DNA of 64,000 nt, from assembly GCF_003918875.1 (NCBI RefSeq), contig NW_025767318.1, forward strand, positions 372,001 through 436,000. Direction: 5' to 3'. The position numbers and the translations under genes were made by a program. Below, in pieces: positions 12,017-46,387 of this stretch; the first letter of the stretch is position 1; each line of letters begins with the position of its first letter. The notes under the pieces are model-generated. The model did not search any database, was not told where the DNA came from, and saw only the letters and a list, made by a program, of their open reading frames with translations. This DNA comes from Haliotis rubra. Taxonomy: Eukaryota.

Positions 12017-12512
12017 ATGAATGAACCGTTGCTGGACACCATGTCTGAGATGAGCAGTGTACAAATGTTTAGAGATGACTTCAGCTTTCTCAAGCTGTGC
12101 CTTGATTTCTTGAACCAGGAAGTAGAGAACATTGATGACGTGAATGACTATGACAACAGGTGCATGCGGGGGTACTTCTCGCACCTGCAGAACGGCTGTG
12201 AGGCGAAGCTCATCCTGCCCCAAGGAGTACGACCTGTGCAACAGTTGCGGGAGGAGGCGCGGTCTGGGGGTAATGTCCTGTATTTTGTAGGCTTCATCGG
12301 GAACCGGTGGAAAGACGTTGGTGAGAGTAGTTTGAAGGATCTGTGGGAGATGGACGACTGTTTATTGGGTCAGCTGAGGAACCACGAGGACATCGTAGCG
12401 GTGAGCAGTGGCGAGCGAACCCCCGGGGTGACTGGGGAAACCTGGTCATTTTCCGCGACCCTTCGGCGGTGGAGAAATGGCGCAATGCCAAGTTTCACGA
12501 TAAAGCAGTCAG
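12017..12512 (+). CDS. Uncharacterised protein family, paralog A, coding exon 1 (apparent 1-nt frameshift at G-run 12425-12428)
   Basis: Homologous to B-D (VLYFVGFIG, W.MD..L...L). Adding one G restores TPGGDWGNLVIFRDPSAVEKWRNAKFHDKAVR up to donor ag|gtaagc at 12513. Confidence 0.8.
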
Positions 12513-14368
12513 GTAAGCATCATGGGAATGCGTAGCTATGGTTATCCAACTTCCTCATCAATTCAACAGAGATGATACTATGGAAACAGAACTTCTATAT
12601 TACCATGAACGTGACGTTTCGGTTAAGACATTTACGCCTTTATTCAGAACAACTGAGATATTTCTATGGATACAGAACTGTTTTATTCAACAAATGCGGC
12701 GTTTTCGTGTAGAAATATCTCAGTTGTTCATCCCACTATTTACTTTCAAAAGGGTATTAATATTCCTCATCCGTTCATCATTTTATACCAGTTTGTATAT
12801 AAGTGAGTTGTGTTTTACGCCGTTTCATGCAGTATTTCGGCTATAGCACAGCGGAGAAAGAGCAGAGGGAGTGGCCACGTGTTACTAACGTGAAGCGACC
12901 AACCCAGGTCGAAGTATGTGTTACAACGGTTGCCAAGGATTGTTTCATTCCGCTAGGGGAATGGCAGCAAAAGCGAACAACAACAGCAGCAATTCCATGA
13001 CCGCAGAGCATTTCTGCCCATACAGCATGACAGATACTTCCATGCAGATAATGGACTCGTAGATCTCCATTTCTCTATCGGGAACACAAAGGTGTTTTAA
13101 TACACGGCTTTGATTTTGGTACCAAGTGCATTCCCGGCACTCTGTGTTTCCTGGTCCTCATTGATGATCTTTTCCAGGCCTCCAATAATTTCAATTAGTC
13201 TAAATAAATATATACTCCTAGACATAGTTTAAAGAACCAGCTTCGACACATTCCACTGAGCGTAAAAGACAAAATAGTCGTAAGAATAATATATAAATGG
13301 ATCACCGCAATATCAGTGGTAACACCGGGTGTGCGTGAACAGTATGGGTATGTTCTGCTATGCCGGTACCAAAATACATTAACAGATATAATTGGTAATT
13401 TATGTTTAATAACTTTATATCCAATATTTTCTGCAAACCAAAGACAGTATAGTCAACAGCATCGATACAAAGCATAATAACAGTTCAGTAAAATCTGTAC
13501 CTGCAAATATTCCGATCAAACAGGAATAGTCTTGAAATACAACCTTGTCTAACTCCAAATATACTTTAACGTACAACTGCTCCTTTAAATGTAAGACAAT
13601 TCTAAACAAAACTTTAGTTAGATATATCTTGTTTGTGAAAATAGTCTATCCGGTGTAAGATTATTCTTAATGGTATCTCACAATGAGAGGGATATATTGA
13701 TAAATACAGTCACGTTTGTGTTGTATCACAAGCTGGCAGTAACTTTAGCATTATTGGAAAATACTATTGCTGTTTGCTGTGCAACAACCTCTCCTTGAAA
13801 TTCAGAGAAATATCACAAGTGTCCATAAATGATATTTCTCTGTTTATGTTTATTGCTTTCCTTAGGTTTTGCTGTGGACTTTGTCCAGGTCGAATCCGTT
13901 GTTTAGTTCAACACTGTGGGTGATGGATGTGGTCCGTGTAGATGTATTTTACGACTTCGCTATAGTATCTCTTCATCTGAAGTGCCTTCTTCGTCATTAA
14001 TACCGCCGTGATGTTGCTGGAATATTGCTAAAGCGGCGTAAAACCAAACTCAGTCAGTCAGTCGTCATTAATACATGACACGTTTTATGGATAAGAACTT
14101 CTTTTTATTCTTTATACGACGTCTCAGAGCTAATCCTTGCTCCTTCCTCAGGTGAATGATGAATGATGCAGAAGCAAGAACTAGCTCTGAAACAGACACA
14201 CCTAGCTCGGAATGGACCCATACATATAAGGTTTAACATTTTCTTCAAGTCTTTACTGAATATCATGTACTCTGTGTATGTGGCTCATACTCTCAATCAC
14301 TGGTTCTATCAAGCAAACACTTGTAGCCCGGGTCAGGTGAATGTGATGTCCTTTTCCCCATTTTTTAG

Positions 14369-14570
14369 AGACATTTCCCCACAAATCTACACATCTGTGA
14401 GGATACACCGGGGAGCGTTACCCCACGGACTCGCTTCAGACAGGTTCAGAGTGGAAAGGACGCTGTTCCTCAACTACGACAACATCGCCCGCACAGTACA
14501 ACGTCGTCACATCCAGATGTGGAAGTCAACACTCACAGATATACCGACGTCGCCTTGTTATGCTTTATAA
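14369..14570 (+). CDS. Paralog A, coding exon 2
   Basis: ttttttag|A then DISPQIYTSVRIHRGALPHGLASDRFRVERTLFLNYDNI...CYAL*; same phase-2 intron position as B and D. Confidence 0.85.
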
Positions 14571-14699
14571 TTTGAAGTTTGTTGATATGTCTTGTTTCAA
14601 AATATTAAACTAAGTGTACAGCCTCCTCCTTGTTTACGTTCTAATAAGGTTGCAGGGCATTTATAAGCTTGCGGTCTAATTCGAATCAAGATTCGGTGT

Positions 14700-14817
14700 G
14701 GGCGGTGGGATAGCCTAGTAGTTAAAGCGTTCGCTCGTCACACCGAAGACCCAGGTTTGATTCCCCTGCCGTTATATTGCTGGAATATTGCTAAAAGCGG
14801 CATAAAACAGTACTCAC
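14700..14817 (+). mobile_element. tRNA-derived SINE family 1, internally deleted
   Basis: Head and tail consensus present; TSD TCAAGATTCGGTGT. Confidence 0.8.
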
Positions 14818-14979
14818 TCAAGATTCGGTGTACAAAATGACGTCCTGTAGCAGCCTAAATGGAATGGTAGTGGGTTCGAATCCCACAGTCTCCCCGATTA
14901 TTATCCTTGGTCTTTTAGCAACATACTGACGTTCGTGGGCCTAACCACAGTAGCAGACATATGTTTAATGTTTCCAGTG

Positions 14980-15315
14980 ATTCTCCCACGTTGGTAAATG
15001 CTCAGTGGCGTTGTGTTTCTCGTGGAGAAAACATTGGATAGAGACGTCACGCATTGACGGCGTTCTCAGTCATGGACAAAACATGTACAGTGACGTTACA
15101 CCGTGACAATATTCTCCGTCGCGGACTACTCATTGTAAAGTGACGTCACGCAGAGGCAAGGTTCACCCACGTTGACAAATGCTGAGTACACTGAGGTCAC
15201 GCACGCCTAACAACCTTCTGCGTCGTAGACATCACGCAGGGACCAGCTTCTCCGTCGTAGACAAAATATTGTACAACCACATCTCGTAGTCACAAGGTTG
15301 TCAGTCGTCGACGCT
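14980..15315. repeat. Diverged ~50-bp tandem repeat with recurrent GACGTCAC
   Basis: About 7-8 units resembling TTCTCCGTCGTGGACAAAACATTGTACAGTGACGTCACGCA. Confidence 0.6.
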
Positions 15316-44444: not shown

Positions 44445-44639
44445 GTACTCACCAGGTTTCCAATCTACTTTTTTTACTGGTGCAGTTTTTCAAGCCTTAT
44501 TTATATTATATATTTTGATCAGTTTTCGAAATGTACATACGCCAGGGTTTTAATAGTATGATAATAGTGGGAAACACCCACCTAGATACAAAACTGAAGA
44601 TTTAGTAAGCAATGAAAGGTTGGTTCATTCTAACTGGAA

Positions 44640-45040
44640 TCCATGAGCAGATGGGTTGAAATTGGTCTTCATCATAACATGCTTATCCCCGGTGAACATC
44701 CGGGTAAGACGTGGTCTCCAACAACCCAGTCTTCTACCGATGGAACATTCGGGTTAAAACTGGTCTTCAAACCATGCTTGTCCCCTGTGAAGATCAGATG
44801 AGAATTGTTCTTCAACAAACCATGCTTGTCGCCCGTTAACATCCGAGTTAGAAATTATCTTCAGCAGCCCATGGGGTCAGACTCACTGCCTATGGTGCAT
44901 GTCATCGTACCCCAGTTGCTTAGATCGATGCTCCTGCTATCAATCACGTGATTGTCGAGACCAGATTAAGTGCAAACCGCCGTCACATAACAGGAATATT
45001 GAGGAGTGTAGCGTTACAAAAAAACCCCGAACAAACAAGC
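44640..45040 (+). mobile_element. Decayed family 2 retroposon with ~5 tandem copies of its 5' module
   Basis: Repeated CC(C)GTGAA(G/C)ATCCGGGTTAGAA..GGTCTTCA..AACCCATGCTT-like units precede a single body and tail. Confidence 0.65.
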
Positions 45041-45446
45041 AAACATTCTCGCTGGATGCAATCTTAAACCTCGACGCCATTTCCTGACTATAGTTTGGTC
45101 TGAAAAAACTTCCACAAGAATCTGTTTTCGTCAGTGACACAGTTCCGTCTTAATCTATGGAATGCTTTCAGGGTGGACCGCAGTGTCTTATCTATCTAAT
45201 GTCATCTGTTTGTTTCAGACAGTATCTTAAAGAGAATACACTATGTTATGTCTTGTTTCAATGGTCGCTTGTTTAGCCGAAGTGGCCCCCTGTCAGGGAA
45301 GACTATTGCTGAGAAACGCAAAAGACTCTTTCTTCAATCACCGTGTATCGGAATTATACACGAGATTTGATGGAAGAAGTGTCATTAAGTAATTGGGGAG
45401 CCACTAAGTCTTCTTATAGATGAAGAAAACATTTCGTTCATATCCA

Positions 45447-45591
45447 CACGCCGAAGACCCGGGTTCGATTCCCCACATGGGTACAATGTGTGAAGCCCCT
45501 TTCTGGTGTTCCCCGCCATGATATTGCTGGAATATTGCTAAAACTAAACTAAACTCACTAACTCACTCACTCACTCACTCACTCACTCACT
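45447..45591 (+). mobile_element. 5'-truncated family 1 SINE
   Basis: B box, body, (CACT)n tail, TSD TCGTTCATAT. Confidence 0.85.
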
Positions 45592-46188
45592 CGTTCATAT
45601 TCATGATTATTTAACTAATTATTATAATTTTGCGTTTTTTCCATTGGATGAGACACAGCGCATGACAGCGAAATTTAACGACAGTTTTCGTCTTTCATCT
45701 ATTTTTCACGAAACTGATTTCTTGAAATGACCTTGAAATTCTTGAGAAAGTCCCATTAACGATTAAATACAGAAGTTTTGCCTTTGATCATAAAGACAAT
45801 TTATCTTAATCTCTGCATTTGAGTATACCATCATAAAGACAACTCAAAGAGTGTGACGAACATCTTCGCTGCGACCCATCCAAATGAACGAATCTAGCAC
45901 CAACGTCCCTACAGTTTGGCGCTCACATTTGGCAGAATCATACTCAAAAACACTCGAAGTGAAAATCAATTTTAACAATTGTACTTCCTCGCGATGTTCC
46001 GTCTCTATAAATACAGTCGTTCTGGTGTAGCATGCAGAGACTACCATTCCCTTAGCAATCATCCAAACACCCACCCGTGCATGTTCCCTGCGCGCACTAG
46101 TCTTGTGCATATCCCCTGAACCAAACCACGCATCCGCTTGTGCTTGAGCAGTGTACGAATACATATTGACTTGTCTCATGTTTTCCAG

Positions 46189-46387
46189 GGATATATCTCC
46201 TGCCTACTATACGTCTATAAGGATACATCGTGGAGTGCTACCCCAGGGACTCGCCTCAGACAGGTTCACTGTAGAGAGGACGCTGTTCGTCAACTACGAC
46301 AACATCACCCATACAGTACAACATCGTCACATCGAGGCGTGGCAGTCCACGCTCACAGATACACCAACGAGGCCCAGTTATGCTTAA
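46189..46387 (+). CDS. Terminal coding exon for paralog D (and probably C)
   Basis: ttttccag|G DISPAYYTSIRIHRGVLPQGLASDRFTVERTLFVNYDNITHTVQHRHIEAWQSTLTDTPTRPSYA*. Confidence 0.88.

What the first reader, a model, noticed from the sequence alone, without database searches (positions are those of the whole stretch)
12017..46387. Tandem cluster of an uncharacterised, enzyme-like protein family, possibly of bacterial origin
Seen in sequence: four paralogous first exons and three terminal exons splice at one conserved phase-2 intron (in an Arg codon) to give ~222-aa proteins with no obvious signal peptide. Conserved blocks are LYFVGFIG, W.MD..L...L, SxERxPGGxWGNxVxxR.P.A..KW-x5-H-x2-A, DISP..YTS.RIHRG.LP.GL and ERTLF.NYD. 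The family matches no animal domain I recognise. Inference: the beta-alpha-beta pattern and the W-x5-H-x2-A helix resemble the dimeric alpha-beta barrel superfamily (ABM monooxygenases, IsdG-type heme-degrading proteins), where that His often binds heme. From memory and unverified, the string VGF.G / GNWGNLVL / H..A...SP.YY.S.R.H.G.LP.GL recalls uncharacterised bacterial proteins. This would fit a horizontally acquired, intron-gaining gene that then expanded in this lineage, possibly for pigment, heme or dietary-metabolite chemistry.
Basis: partly seen in the sequence, partly recalled or inferred. Interest (0 to 1): 0.85.

Follow-up and report, generated by a model that had tools for sequence, protein, structure and literature searches.

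The report
Ancient ABM-fold gene family, duplicated in abalone
The abalone gene cluster is real and encodes an unnamed enzyme-like family with an antibiotic-biosynthesis-monooxygenase (ABM) type fold, but the family was not recently acquired from bacteria: it is an old animal and choanoflagellate family whose bacterial relatives sit beside enzymes that remove methyl groups from amines.

Summary
The window (Haliotis rubra) holds exactly four first exons and three terminal exons of one family. They are joined at a phase-2 GT..AG intron inside an Arg codon, and spliced copy B equals NCBI LOC124255972 (222 aa). Copy A has a 1-nt deletion in a G run. Copy C has no terminal exon of its own.

The fold guess is supported. 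A confident AlphaFold model (pLDDT 87) has an ABM / dimeric alpha-beta-barrel core at residues ~77-180. No Pfam, NCBIfam or PDB sequence match exists.

The idea of horizontal transfer into this lineage is not supported. Orthologues occur in bivalves, other gastropods, annelids, echinoderms, a hemichordate, amphioxus and a choanoflagellate. The same phase-2 intron is present in amphioxus, Owenia and an oyster. All eukaryote rows form one clade (100/100). Only the tandem expansion is abalone-specific.

There is a new functional lead. In bacteria (mostly Chloroflexota) the gene is fused or adjacent to a PhnD-like binding protein that lacks a signal peptide. It also lies beside oxidases resembling monomeric sarcosine oxidase, dehydrogenases resembling dimethylglycine dehydrogenase, and betaine-homocysteine-type methyltransferases. 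This points to catabolism of methylated amines.

Expression in abalone could not be tested. The scan had separately noted exons C and D on this same window (s1-335147).

The parts
12017..12512 (+). Copy A, first exon. The frame is broken by a 1-nt deletion in a G run at about 12425-12428. The donor is AG|GT.
   Evidence: NCBI's model P0005 is truncated at 159 aa. The H. asinina and H. cracherodii orthologues P0006 and P0007 are intact.
14369..14570 (+). Copy A, terminal exon, intact, stop codon included.
31239..31708 (+). Copy B, first exon (470 nt, ends in phase 2).
   Evidence: Identical to P0001.
33508..33706 (+). Copy B, terminal exon, stop codon included.
33390..33422 (+). Eleven-codon relic of a terminal exon, just upstream of B's real terminal exon.
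42581..43050 (+). Copy C, first exon. The reading frame is open and the donor is intact, but it has no terminal exon of its own. It is either an alternative first exon for D's terminal exon or an orphan duplicate.
   Evidence: H. asinina has the same layout.
43975..44444 (+). Copy D, first exon.
   Evidence: NCBI's model P0004 starts at an internal Met.
46189..46387 (+). Copy D, terminal exon, stop codon included.
16600..16698 (-). Decayed 33-codon fragment of a first exon, containing a stop codon.
   Evidence: (E 0.002)

Best explanation
Shown:
- This is a lineage-specific tandem cluster in Haliotis rubra: two intact genes (B and D), one extra first exon (C) and one frameshifted copy (A).
- The ~220-aa family is unnamed and has no signal-peptide-like N-terminus, so it is presumably cytosolic. 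Its core (residues ~77-180) has the ABM / dimeric alpha-beta-barrel fold, extended by an N-terminal helix/strand segment and a C-terminal beta-hairpin.
- The family is old in animals. It occurs in several marine invertebrate phyla and in a choanoflagellate, and one phase-2 intron position is shared by protostomes and a cephalochordate.
- Its only other relatives found are a large set of bacterial hypothetical proteins. The genome-derived members found were mostly Chloroflexota, plus Meiothermus and Acidimicrobiia.

Inferred:
- The protein is a small-molecule enzyme or ligand-binding subunit. Nearly invariant polar residues (Asp104, Tyr120, Asn133, His152, Tyr164, Arg168, His170, Arg203 in B numbering) lie on the strands and helices that enclose the pocket in ABM proteins.
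- In bacteria it works together with a PhnD-like solute-binding protein that has no signal peptide (adjacent, or fused at either end). It also works with flavoenzymes and methyltransferases that strip methyl groups from amines: oxidases resembling monomeric sarcosine oxidase or N-methyltryptophan oxidase, dehydrogenases resembling dimethylglycine dehydrogenase, heterotetrameric sarcosine oxidase, MttB-type methyltransferase and betaine-homocysteine-type methyltransferase.
- The most likely role in abalone is therefore a step in the turnover of a methylated amine, such as a betaine-type osmolyte. This would fit retention in marine invertebrates.

My confidence differs by layer: real genes about 0.95, fold about 0.9, ancient vertical inheritance in animals about 0.9, bacterial link to N-demethylation about 0.55, same role in abalone about 0.35.
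For: - Gene structure. Identity to NCBI models.
- Fold: the AlphaFold2 model built on 40 sequences has pLDDT 87.3 and pTM 0.85. Foldseek against PDB has ABM / ferredoxin-like dimer chains at the top (probability ~1.0, TM by target 0.6-0.7), though none reaches E <= 0.001. In the VIA-align search, 2 chains reach Z >= 8 and 64 reach Z >= 5; nearly all of the 50 rows shown are from this superfamily and cover their ~100-aa chains almost fully. Atlas models of Chloroflexota hypothetical proteins match the whole length at TM 0.76-0.81. One family member has a weak Pfam ABM hit at E 5.7e-4.
- Distribution: 404 representative proteins at E <= 1e-3. Named animal and choanoflagellate members. Bacterial genomes.
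- Intron: the same codon and phase in Branchiostoma and Owenia. An oyster genomic ORF diverges exactly there, while a 1187-nt oyster contig carries the uninterrupted coding sequence. About 20 further ORFs end at profile position 153-155.
- Tree: the 25 eukaryote rows form one clade with 100/100 support. Haliotis A and B/D are sisters at 98/98.
- PhnD-like partner: fusions carrying PF12974. Adjacent genes in L025/26, L008, L012 and L007. No signal peptide on the L025 partner.
- Demethylation neighbours.
Against: - No experiment or RNA data for abalone were available. The only runs found were DNA of a ~95% identical relative.
- The functional link rests on gene neighbourhood in three or four bacterial lineages. 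Other loci show no such neighbours: Caldilineaceae L005/L019 sits among leucine-biosynthesis genes, and L006 and L011 have none.
- Animal proteins lack the PhnD-like domain, and no such gene or DAO-family gene lies in this window.
- A shared fold does not prove catalysis. Some members of this superfamily, such as the stress-response Dabb proteins, have no known enzymatic activity.
- Absence from vertebrates, arthropods and nematodes is only 'not seen among the named hits'.
Confidence: 0.55

Rival explanations
1. A bacterial gene entered the abalone (or gastropod) lineage by recent horizontal transfer, gained an intron, and then expanded.
For: Bacterial full-length homologues exist. No Pfam domain or vertebrate homologue was seen. 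The tandem expansion is Haliotis-specific.
Against: Orthologues occur in five animal phyla and a choanoflagellate. The phase-2 intron is identical in amphioxus, an annelid and an oyster. The eukaryote rows are monophyletic at 100/100, with abalone nested among animals. The cluster lies between ordinary animal features, namely nuclear-receptor exons and LINE fragments.
Confidence: 0.02
2. The protein is a heme-binding or heme-degrading enzyme of the IsdG/MhuD type, with the conserved His as the heme ligand.
For: It shares the fold. IsdG, MhuD and HmoB appear among the structural matches at Z 5.7-6.6. His152 is nearly invariant and lies at the start of the second helix.
Against: IsdG-type chains rank below many cofactor-free ABM proteins. 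Strand beta1 (LYFVGFIG) has no Asn for the Asn-Trp-His triad. Trp146 is replaced in many members. The bacterial neighbours are flavoenzymes and methyltransferases, not heme-uptake genes.
Confidence: 0.08
3. The protein is a non-catalytic small-molecule binding or stress-response protein, like Dabb or SP1, or an assembly or regulatory partner of the neighbouring flavoenzymes.
For: Dabb and stress-response barrel proteins are among the structural neighbours. The family is consistently paired with a binding protein and flavoenzymes rather than found alone.
Against: A set of nearly invariant polar residues (Asp, Tyr, Asn, His, Tyr, Arg, His, Arg) is kept from bacteria to animals. This is more typical of an active site. 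Animals keep the domain without the partner domain.
Confidence: 0.2
4. The bacterial module handles aminophosphonates, for example N-methylated 2-aminoethylphosphonate, rather than betaine-type amines. Animals would use the protein in phosphonate or phosphonolipid metabolism.
For: The partner domain matches Pfam Phosphonate-bd and NCBIfam PhnD models. FAD oxidases of the DAO family act on N-methyl-aminoethylphosphonate in bacterial phosphonate catabolism (PMC10590968, seen in the title and abstract only). From my own memory, unverified: marine molluscs are rich in aminoethylphosphonate lipids.
Against: The PhnD matches fall below the curated cut-offs for the true PhnD family (76.6 bits against 261). 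No PhnW, PhnX, PhnA or C-P lyase genes were seen in the neighbourhoods. Instead the neighbours are betaine-homocysteine-type methyltransferase, sarcosine oxidase subunits, MttB and GcvT-domain enzymes.
Confidence: 0.1

Closest known systems
ABM domain proteins (Pfam PF03992; for example ActVA-Orf6, YgiN, LsrG, SnoaB, Rv0793, SO0527)
   Same: They share the ferredoxin-like beta-alpha-beta-beta-alpha-beta core. Structural matches cover whole ~100-aa chains (Z up to 8.3, rmsd 2.1-2.8 A; Foldseek probability ~1.0). The His after strand 3 sits where many ABM proteins have one. One family member gives a weak PF03992 hit.
   Different: The abalone protein has no significant sequence match to PF03992. 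It is twice as long, with a conserved ~75-aa N-terminal extension and a C-terminal beta-hairpin. It has its own motif set (FVGF.G, NLV, H..A, SP.YY..R.H.G.LP.G). It is paired with a PhnD-like protein.
Roughly 210-aa 'putative monooxygenase' structures 3MCS (Fusobacterium FN1347) and 3F44 (Lactobacillus)
   Same: They are similar in length, and the alignment spans residues 6-179 of the model (138-141 residues, Z 7.2-7.4). This suggests a two-lobed single-chain barrel.
   Different: The rmsd is about 6 A and identity 5-6%. Their functions are also unknown, and there is no sequence relationship.
DUF3291 (PF11695), Monooxy_af470-like/DUF4188 (PF13826) and PB2B2_08 (PF27604)
   Same: These were the nearest named clusters by language-model features (0.81-0.89) and by shape (TM 0.47-0.64). 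All are extended ABM-like barrels of 130-180 aa.
   Different: hmmscan gives no hit to any of them. The scores fall in the range the tools call leads only.
IsdG/MhuD heme oxygenases
   Same: They share the fold and have a His in the second helix region.
   Different: The Asn-Trp-His triad is not kept, they rank lower among the structural matches, and the genomic context is unrelated.

Membership tests
ABM / dimeric alpha-beta barrel superfamily (fold level) | A ferredoxin-like beta-alpha-beta-beta-alpha-beta core of about 100 residues | tested here: met
   The model has pLDDT 87. Residues 77-180 superpose on many ABM chains (Foldseek probability ~1.0, TM by target 0.6-0.7; VIA Z 7-8.3). Nearly all of the top 50 matches belong to this superfamily.
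ABM / dimeric alpha-beta barrel superfamily (fold level) | Barrel closed by dimerisation or by a second lobe in the same chain | not testable with these tools
The ~210-aa structures 3MCS and 3F44 align over residues 6-179, which hints at a two-lobed chain.
Pfam ABM (PF03992), sequence family | Score above the Pfam gathering threshold | tested here: not met
   P0001 has no hit. Only 1 of 40 family members has a hit, at E 5.7e-4.
IsdG-type heme-degrading enzymes | Asn (beta1), Trp and His catalytic triad | tested here: not met
   Strand beta1 (residues 79-88) has no Asn. Trp146 varies across the family. Only His152 is nearly invariant. The residue correspondence to IsdG is approximate, taken from the ranges.
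IsdG-type heme-degrading enzymes | Heme binding and turnover | not testable with these tools
   This needs recombinant protein.
Horizontally acquired gene restricted to one animal lineage | Absent from other animal phyla and nested within a donor clade | tested here: not met
   The family is present in five phyla plus a choanoflagellate. The eukaryote rows form one clade at 100/100.
Horizontally acquired gene restricted to one animal lineage | Introns gained after transfer, and therefore lineage-specific | tested here: not met
   The same phase-2 intron is found in Haliotis, Branchiostoma, Owenia and an oyster.
PhnD periplasmic phosphonate-binding proteins (applies to the bacterial partner, not the abalone protein) | Signal peptide, neighbouring ABC transporter genes, and a score above the PhnD equivalog cut-off | tested here: not met
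   The L025 partner has no signal-peptide-like N-terminus. No permease or ATPase genes are adjacent. TIGR03431 scores 76.6 bits against a cut-off of 261. It does pass the Pfam PF12974 threshold.

The most novel reading that the evidence does not exclude
This family and a cytosolic PhnD-like binding protein form a previously undescribed two-part module for breaking down a methylated amine, such as a betaine-type osmolyte. The module arose in bacteria as an operon. It was taken up as a fusion by an ancestor of choanoflagellates and animals. It was later reduced to the ABM-like half and kept only in marine invertebrates. In abalone it has been duplicated and may have acquired alternative first exons.
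Probability: 0.25. Interest if true: 0.6.

Novelty: new variant of a known kind. Interest (0 to 1): 0.42.

Why it matters
The finding was rated highly as a possible bacteria-to-mollusc gene transfer, and that reading fails. What remains is smaller but real.

- A sizeable protein family (404 representative clusters at E <= 1e-3) is conserved from Chloroflexota to amphioxus. It has no Pfam or NCBIfam model, no solved structure detectable by sequence, and no literature on its gene identifiers.
- It now has a confident fold assignment.
- It has a conserved partner, the PhnD-like protein, found both adjacent and fused.
- It has a repeated neighbourhood of N-demethylating enzymes.

Together these give a concrete, testable entry point to its function. 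The patchy distribution (bacteria, choanoflagellates, marine invertebrates) also makes it a useful case for studying ancient gene transfer or differential loss.

Tried and rejected
- Pfam and NCBIfam scans of the abalone protein gave only sub-threshold noise (HupF_HypC, Lys_KAL_CLE).
- PDB sequence searches with two family profiles found nothing meaningful.
- The first AlphaFold run, built on five abalone sequences, was poor (pLDDT 63). It was replaced by the 40-sequence model.
- Foldseek against PDB gave no hit at E <= 0.001. The fold call rests on probability, coverage, the consistency of the hit list, and the independent VIA-align search.
A 6-sequence alignment worked, but it biases the bacterial genome sample toward Chloroflexota.
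- The RNA check failed. The only runs holding the C/D stretch (X1, X2) are genomic DNA of a relative ~95% identical. They cover introns and repeats and show no splice joints. Expression, the C-to-D-exon-2 splice and the copy A frameshift therefore remain untested.
- Ptychodera P0013 was not on record for a locus look-up.
- A literature search for six gene identifiers of the family returned nothing. A search for abalone plus horizontal gene transfer found nothing relevant.
- In the FastTree of 226 rows, the two reverse fusions P0057 and P0155 grouped near the eukaryotes. The careful tree placed them inside the bacterial part on a long branch, so I do not count them as eukaryotic.
- tblastn of the PhnD-like, DAO, Sox, MttB and related neighbour proteins against the window found none of them here.

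
Full report
WHAT IS IN THE WINDOW

The window is from the blacklip abalone Haliotis rubra. Joining 31239-31708 to 33508-33706 across a GT..AG intron gives a 222-aa protein. It is identical to NCBI 'uncharacterized protein LOC124255972 [Haliotis rubra]' (P0001).

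tblastn with this protein and a family-profile scan of the six-frame translation of all 64 kb agree. There are four first exons and three terminal exons, all on the + strand.

| Copy | First exon | Terminal exon |
|---|---|---|
| A | 12017-12512 | 14369-14570 |
| B | 31239-31708 | 33508-33706 |
| C | 42581-43050 | none of its own |
| D | 43975-44444 | 46189-46387 |

Every donor is AG|GT and every acceptor is ..AG|G or ..AG|A, so the intron splits an Arg codon in phase 2.

- Copy A carries a 1-nt deletion in a C5G4 run at about 12425-12428. NCBI's model of it reads on into a truncated 159-aa product (P0005). The A orthologues of H. asinina and H. cracherodii are intact (P0006, P0007).
- Copy C is a 510-bp duplicate of little more than the first exon: 89.6% identical to D over 42570-43079 against 43964-44473. 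It has an open frame and the same donor as D.
- Ka/Ks among the B, C and D first exons is 0.35-0.63, based on few substitutions.
- H. asinina has the same layout: first exon, about 2.8 kb, first exon, about 5.4 kb, one terminal exon (L024). The arrangement therefore predates the split of the two species. This agrees with the scan's separate note s1-335147.
- Two small relics exist, at 33390-33422 and on the minus strand at 16600-16698.

The surroundings are ordinary animal DNA. There are nuclear-receptor ligand-binding-domain exons at about 6.5 kb, reverse-transcriptase fragments at 25.4-27.8 kb and 35.5-39.4 kb, and tandem repeats near 48-50 kb and 60 kb.

WHAT THE PROTEIN IS

Pfam and NCBIfam give nothing for the abalone protein. 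They give essentially nothing for 40 diverse members: one weak ABM hit at E 5.7e-4. Profile searches of PDB sequences are empty.

An exhaustive profile search of 1.84 billion representative proteins found 404 relatives at E <= 1e-3 and 183 at E <= 1e-10. Animal and bacterial members align end to end at about 210-220 aa. The nearly invariant positions, in B numbering, are V82 G83 F84 G86, D104, L107, Y120, N133 L134 V135, H152, P161, Y164, R168, H170, G172, G177 and R203.

With that alignment, AlphaFold2 gives a confident model: pLDDT 87.3, pTM 0.85. Its layout is:
- a long N-terminal helix (7-35), two short strands and a helix (62-73);
- then beta(79-88), alpha(94-111), beta(117-126), beta(130-137), alpha(141-163), beta(164-174);
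- then a beta-hairpin (184-209).

The structural searches agree on the core.
- Foldseek against PDB puts ABM / 'dimeric ferredoxin-like' chains first, with probability about 1.0 and TM by target 0.6-0.7, although no E-value is below 1e-3.
- An independent all-against-representatives search gives Z up to 8.3. Nearly every one of the top 50 rows belongs to that superfamily and covers the whole ~100-aa chain over model residues about 77-180.
- ESM-Atlas models of Chloroflexota hypothetical proteins match the full length at TM 0.76-0.81.
- Language-model neighbours are the same clusters, followed by DUF3291, ABM and DUF4188.

The specific heme / IsdG idea is not. Strand beta1 has no Asn, Trp146 is not conserved, and IsdG-type chains rank lower.

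WHERE IT COMES FROM

Named members come from the following taxa:

| Group | Taxa |
|---|---|
| Bivalves | Mytilus, Pinctada, Magallana/Crassostrea |
| Gastropods | Lottia, Patella, Littorina |
| Annelids | Capitella, Owenia |
| Echinoderms | Amphiura, Patiria |
| Hemichordate | Ptychodera |
| Cephalochordate | Branchiostoma |
| Choanoflagellate | Choanoeca flexa |

In Choanoeca flexa the domain is the C-terminal part of a 511-aa protein that begins with a PhnD-like domain.

The intron is shared across phyla.
- In Branchiostoma (L021) and Owenia (L022) an intron splits the homologous codon in phase 2: GTC AG|GT...AG|G GAT in Branchiostoma and ATC AT|GT...AG|G GAT in Owenia.
- An oyster genomic ORF diverges from the protein exactly there, while a 1187-nt oyster contig carries the uninterrupted coding sequence. 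That contig is a spliced transcript.
- About twenty further ORFs among the best hits stop matching at profile position 153-155.

A careful maximum-likelihood tree (IQ-TREE, LG+C20 PMSF, 90 rows) gives these results:
- All 25 eukaryote-type rows fall in one clade with 100/100 support.
- That clade's sister, at 97/78, is a five-member bacterial-type group (P0052 and relatives).
- Haliotis A and B/D form a Haliotis-only clade at 98/98.
- H. rubra B and D are each other's closest relatives at 98/98.

The gene, with this intron, was therefore already present in the bilaterian ancestor, and very probably before animals. Only the tandem expansion belongs to abalones. A bacterial origin is still possible, but only as an ancient event. 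The tree is unrooted, so the direction of any transfer is not shown.

WHAT IT PROBABLY DOES

This section is inference from bacterial gene context. Bacterial members found in species genomes are mostly Chloroflexota (Anaerolineae, Caldilineaceae, Thermoflexales, Ktedonobacteria), plus Meiothermus. Acidimicrobiia appear among the metagenome names. The search pattern was biased toward Chloroflexota.

Two associations recur.

(a) A PhnD-like protein (Pfam PF12974).
- It is fused at the N-terminus in bacteria (P0038, P0109) and in the choanoflagellate-type proteins (P0050, P0081, P0111, P0142). Two proteins (P0057, P0155) carry extra sequence C-terminal to the domain; Pfam gives no hit for either, and the first part of it starts like the PhnD-like proteins by eye, so a reverse-order fusion is possible but not shown.
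- It is encoded immediately next door in L025/26 (3-nt gap, same strand), L008, L012 and L007.
- The L025 partner has no signal peptide. No ABC permease or ATPase gene is adjacent, so it is not a classical transporter component.
- The L025 group is the sister of the eukaryote clade. This fits an origin of the eukaryote fusion from such a gene pair.

(b) Enzymes of oxidative or transfer demethylation of amines.
- In Anaerolineae (L001-3, L013, L017) the divergent neighbour is an 838-861-aa protein with DAO, FAO_M and GcvT domains, the architecture of dimethylglycine or sarcosine dehydrogenase.
- In three Ktedonobacteria loci (L007, L009, L010) the gene is followed by a 368-aa oxidase whose best matches are N-methyltryptophan oxidase and monomeric sarcosine oxidase. 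Next comes a PF02574 homocysteine S-methyltransferase, the betaine-homocysteine type. In L007 the PhnD-like gene follows.
- In L014-16 the PhnD fusion lies back to back with a 45% identical oxidase of the same kind. It is near sarcosine oxidase subunit genes (SoxB-like, SoxD, SoxA-like), an MttB-family methyltransferase and an MFS transporter.
- Other loci (Caldilineaceae, L006, L011) show no such neighbours.

My best reading is an ABM-fold enzyme or ligand-handling subunit that acts with a cytosolic binding protein in the catabolism of a methylated amine. The chemistry of its own step is unknown. Transfer of this role to abalone is plausible, because the family is kept in marine invertebrates that use methylamine osmolytes (this point is my own knowledge). 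It is unproven. A phosphonate-related substrate is a weaker alternative.

WHAT COULD NOT BE DONE

- No RNA run holds the stretch. The two runs found are genomic DNA of a relative about 95% identical. Abalone expression, use of exon C and the copy A frameshift are therefore untested.
- Claims of absence from other animal groups rest only on the named hits.

VERDICT

The fold inference is supported. The family is a new, unannotated branch of a known fold superfamily, with a useful functional lead. Interest is moderate.

Noticed in passing
window 5770-6862 (+): Two open reading frames that look like exons of a nuclear hormone receptor. The second matches the Pfam Hormone_recep ligand-binding domain at E 1.2e-9. 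This confirms an ordinary animal chromosomal setting.
   Followed up: partly
window 25375-27784 (+), 35480-36755 (+), 37464-39412 (-): Fragments of non-LTR retrotransposons lie between the family copies. There are RVT_1 hits at 25375-26166 and at 38041-38760.
   Followed up: partly
window 45447-45564 and 29531-29654: A short repeat, 88% alike between the two sites, is present at enormous copy number in the related genome runs (word depth in the millions). Flanking loose ends resemble the 5' part of a tRNA, so it is probably a tRNA-derived SINE. ARAGORN finds no tRNA gene in the window.
   Followed up: partly
window 43085-43770 and 44729-45002: The intergenic and intronic stretches between exons C, D and the shared terminal exon are also high-copy repeats in the related genome (depth 10^3-10^4 against about 50 elsewhere).
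   Followed up: no
window 48187-49962 (-) and 60190-60830 (+): Long tandem-repeat tracts give spurious ORFs of 500-590 aa and about 200 aa. There is strong AT and GC skew at 48-50 kb and 60-62 kb.
   Followed up: no
window 41323-41900 and 30366-30595: An array of repeats of roughly 50-200 bp lies upstream of exon C and is shared with the region upstream of B (70-81% identity).
   Followed up: no
L024 4483-5538 (H. asinina): A further, decayed copy lies upstream of the two first exons in H. asinina: fragmented first-exon pieces and a terminal-exon-like piece within 1 kb. NCBI's H. asinina model P0002 joins the C-like first exon to an unrelated 29-aa exon at 11796-11882 rather than to the conserved terminal exon.
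   Followed up: partly
L021 3237/3697 (Branchiostoma lanceolatum): The amphioxus orthologue has an extra intron (between residues 79 and 80, just before the FVGF strand) that the abalone and Owenia genes lack.
   Followed up: partly
L025 6684-9554 (-): In the bacterial group closest to the eukaryote clade, the PhnD-like/ABM-like pair is flanked by two TrkH potassium-uptake genes and a beta-carbonic anhydrase. This may hint at a link to osmotic adaptation.
   Followed up: no
L017 395-1441 (-) and 4629-5354 (-): The Anaerolineae locus also has a VanA_C-type (Rieske oxygenase C-terminal domain) gene and a GntR/UTRA regulator a few kb from the family gene. Both are conserved in L002 and L003.
   Followed up: no
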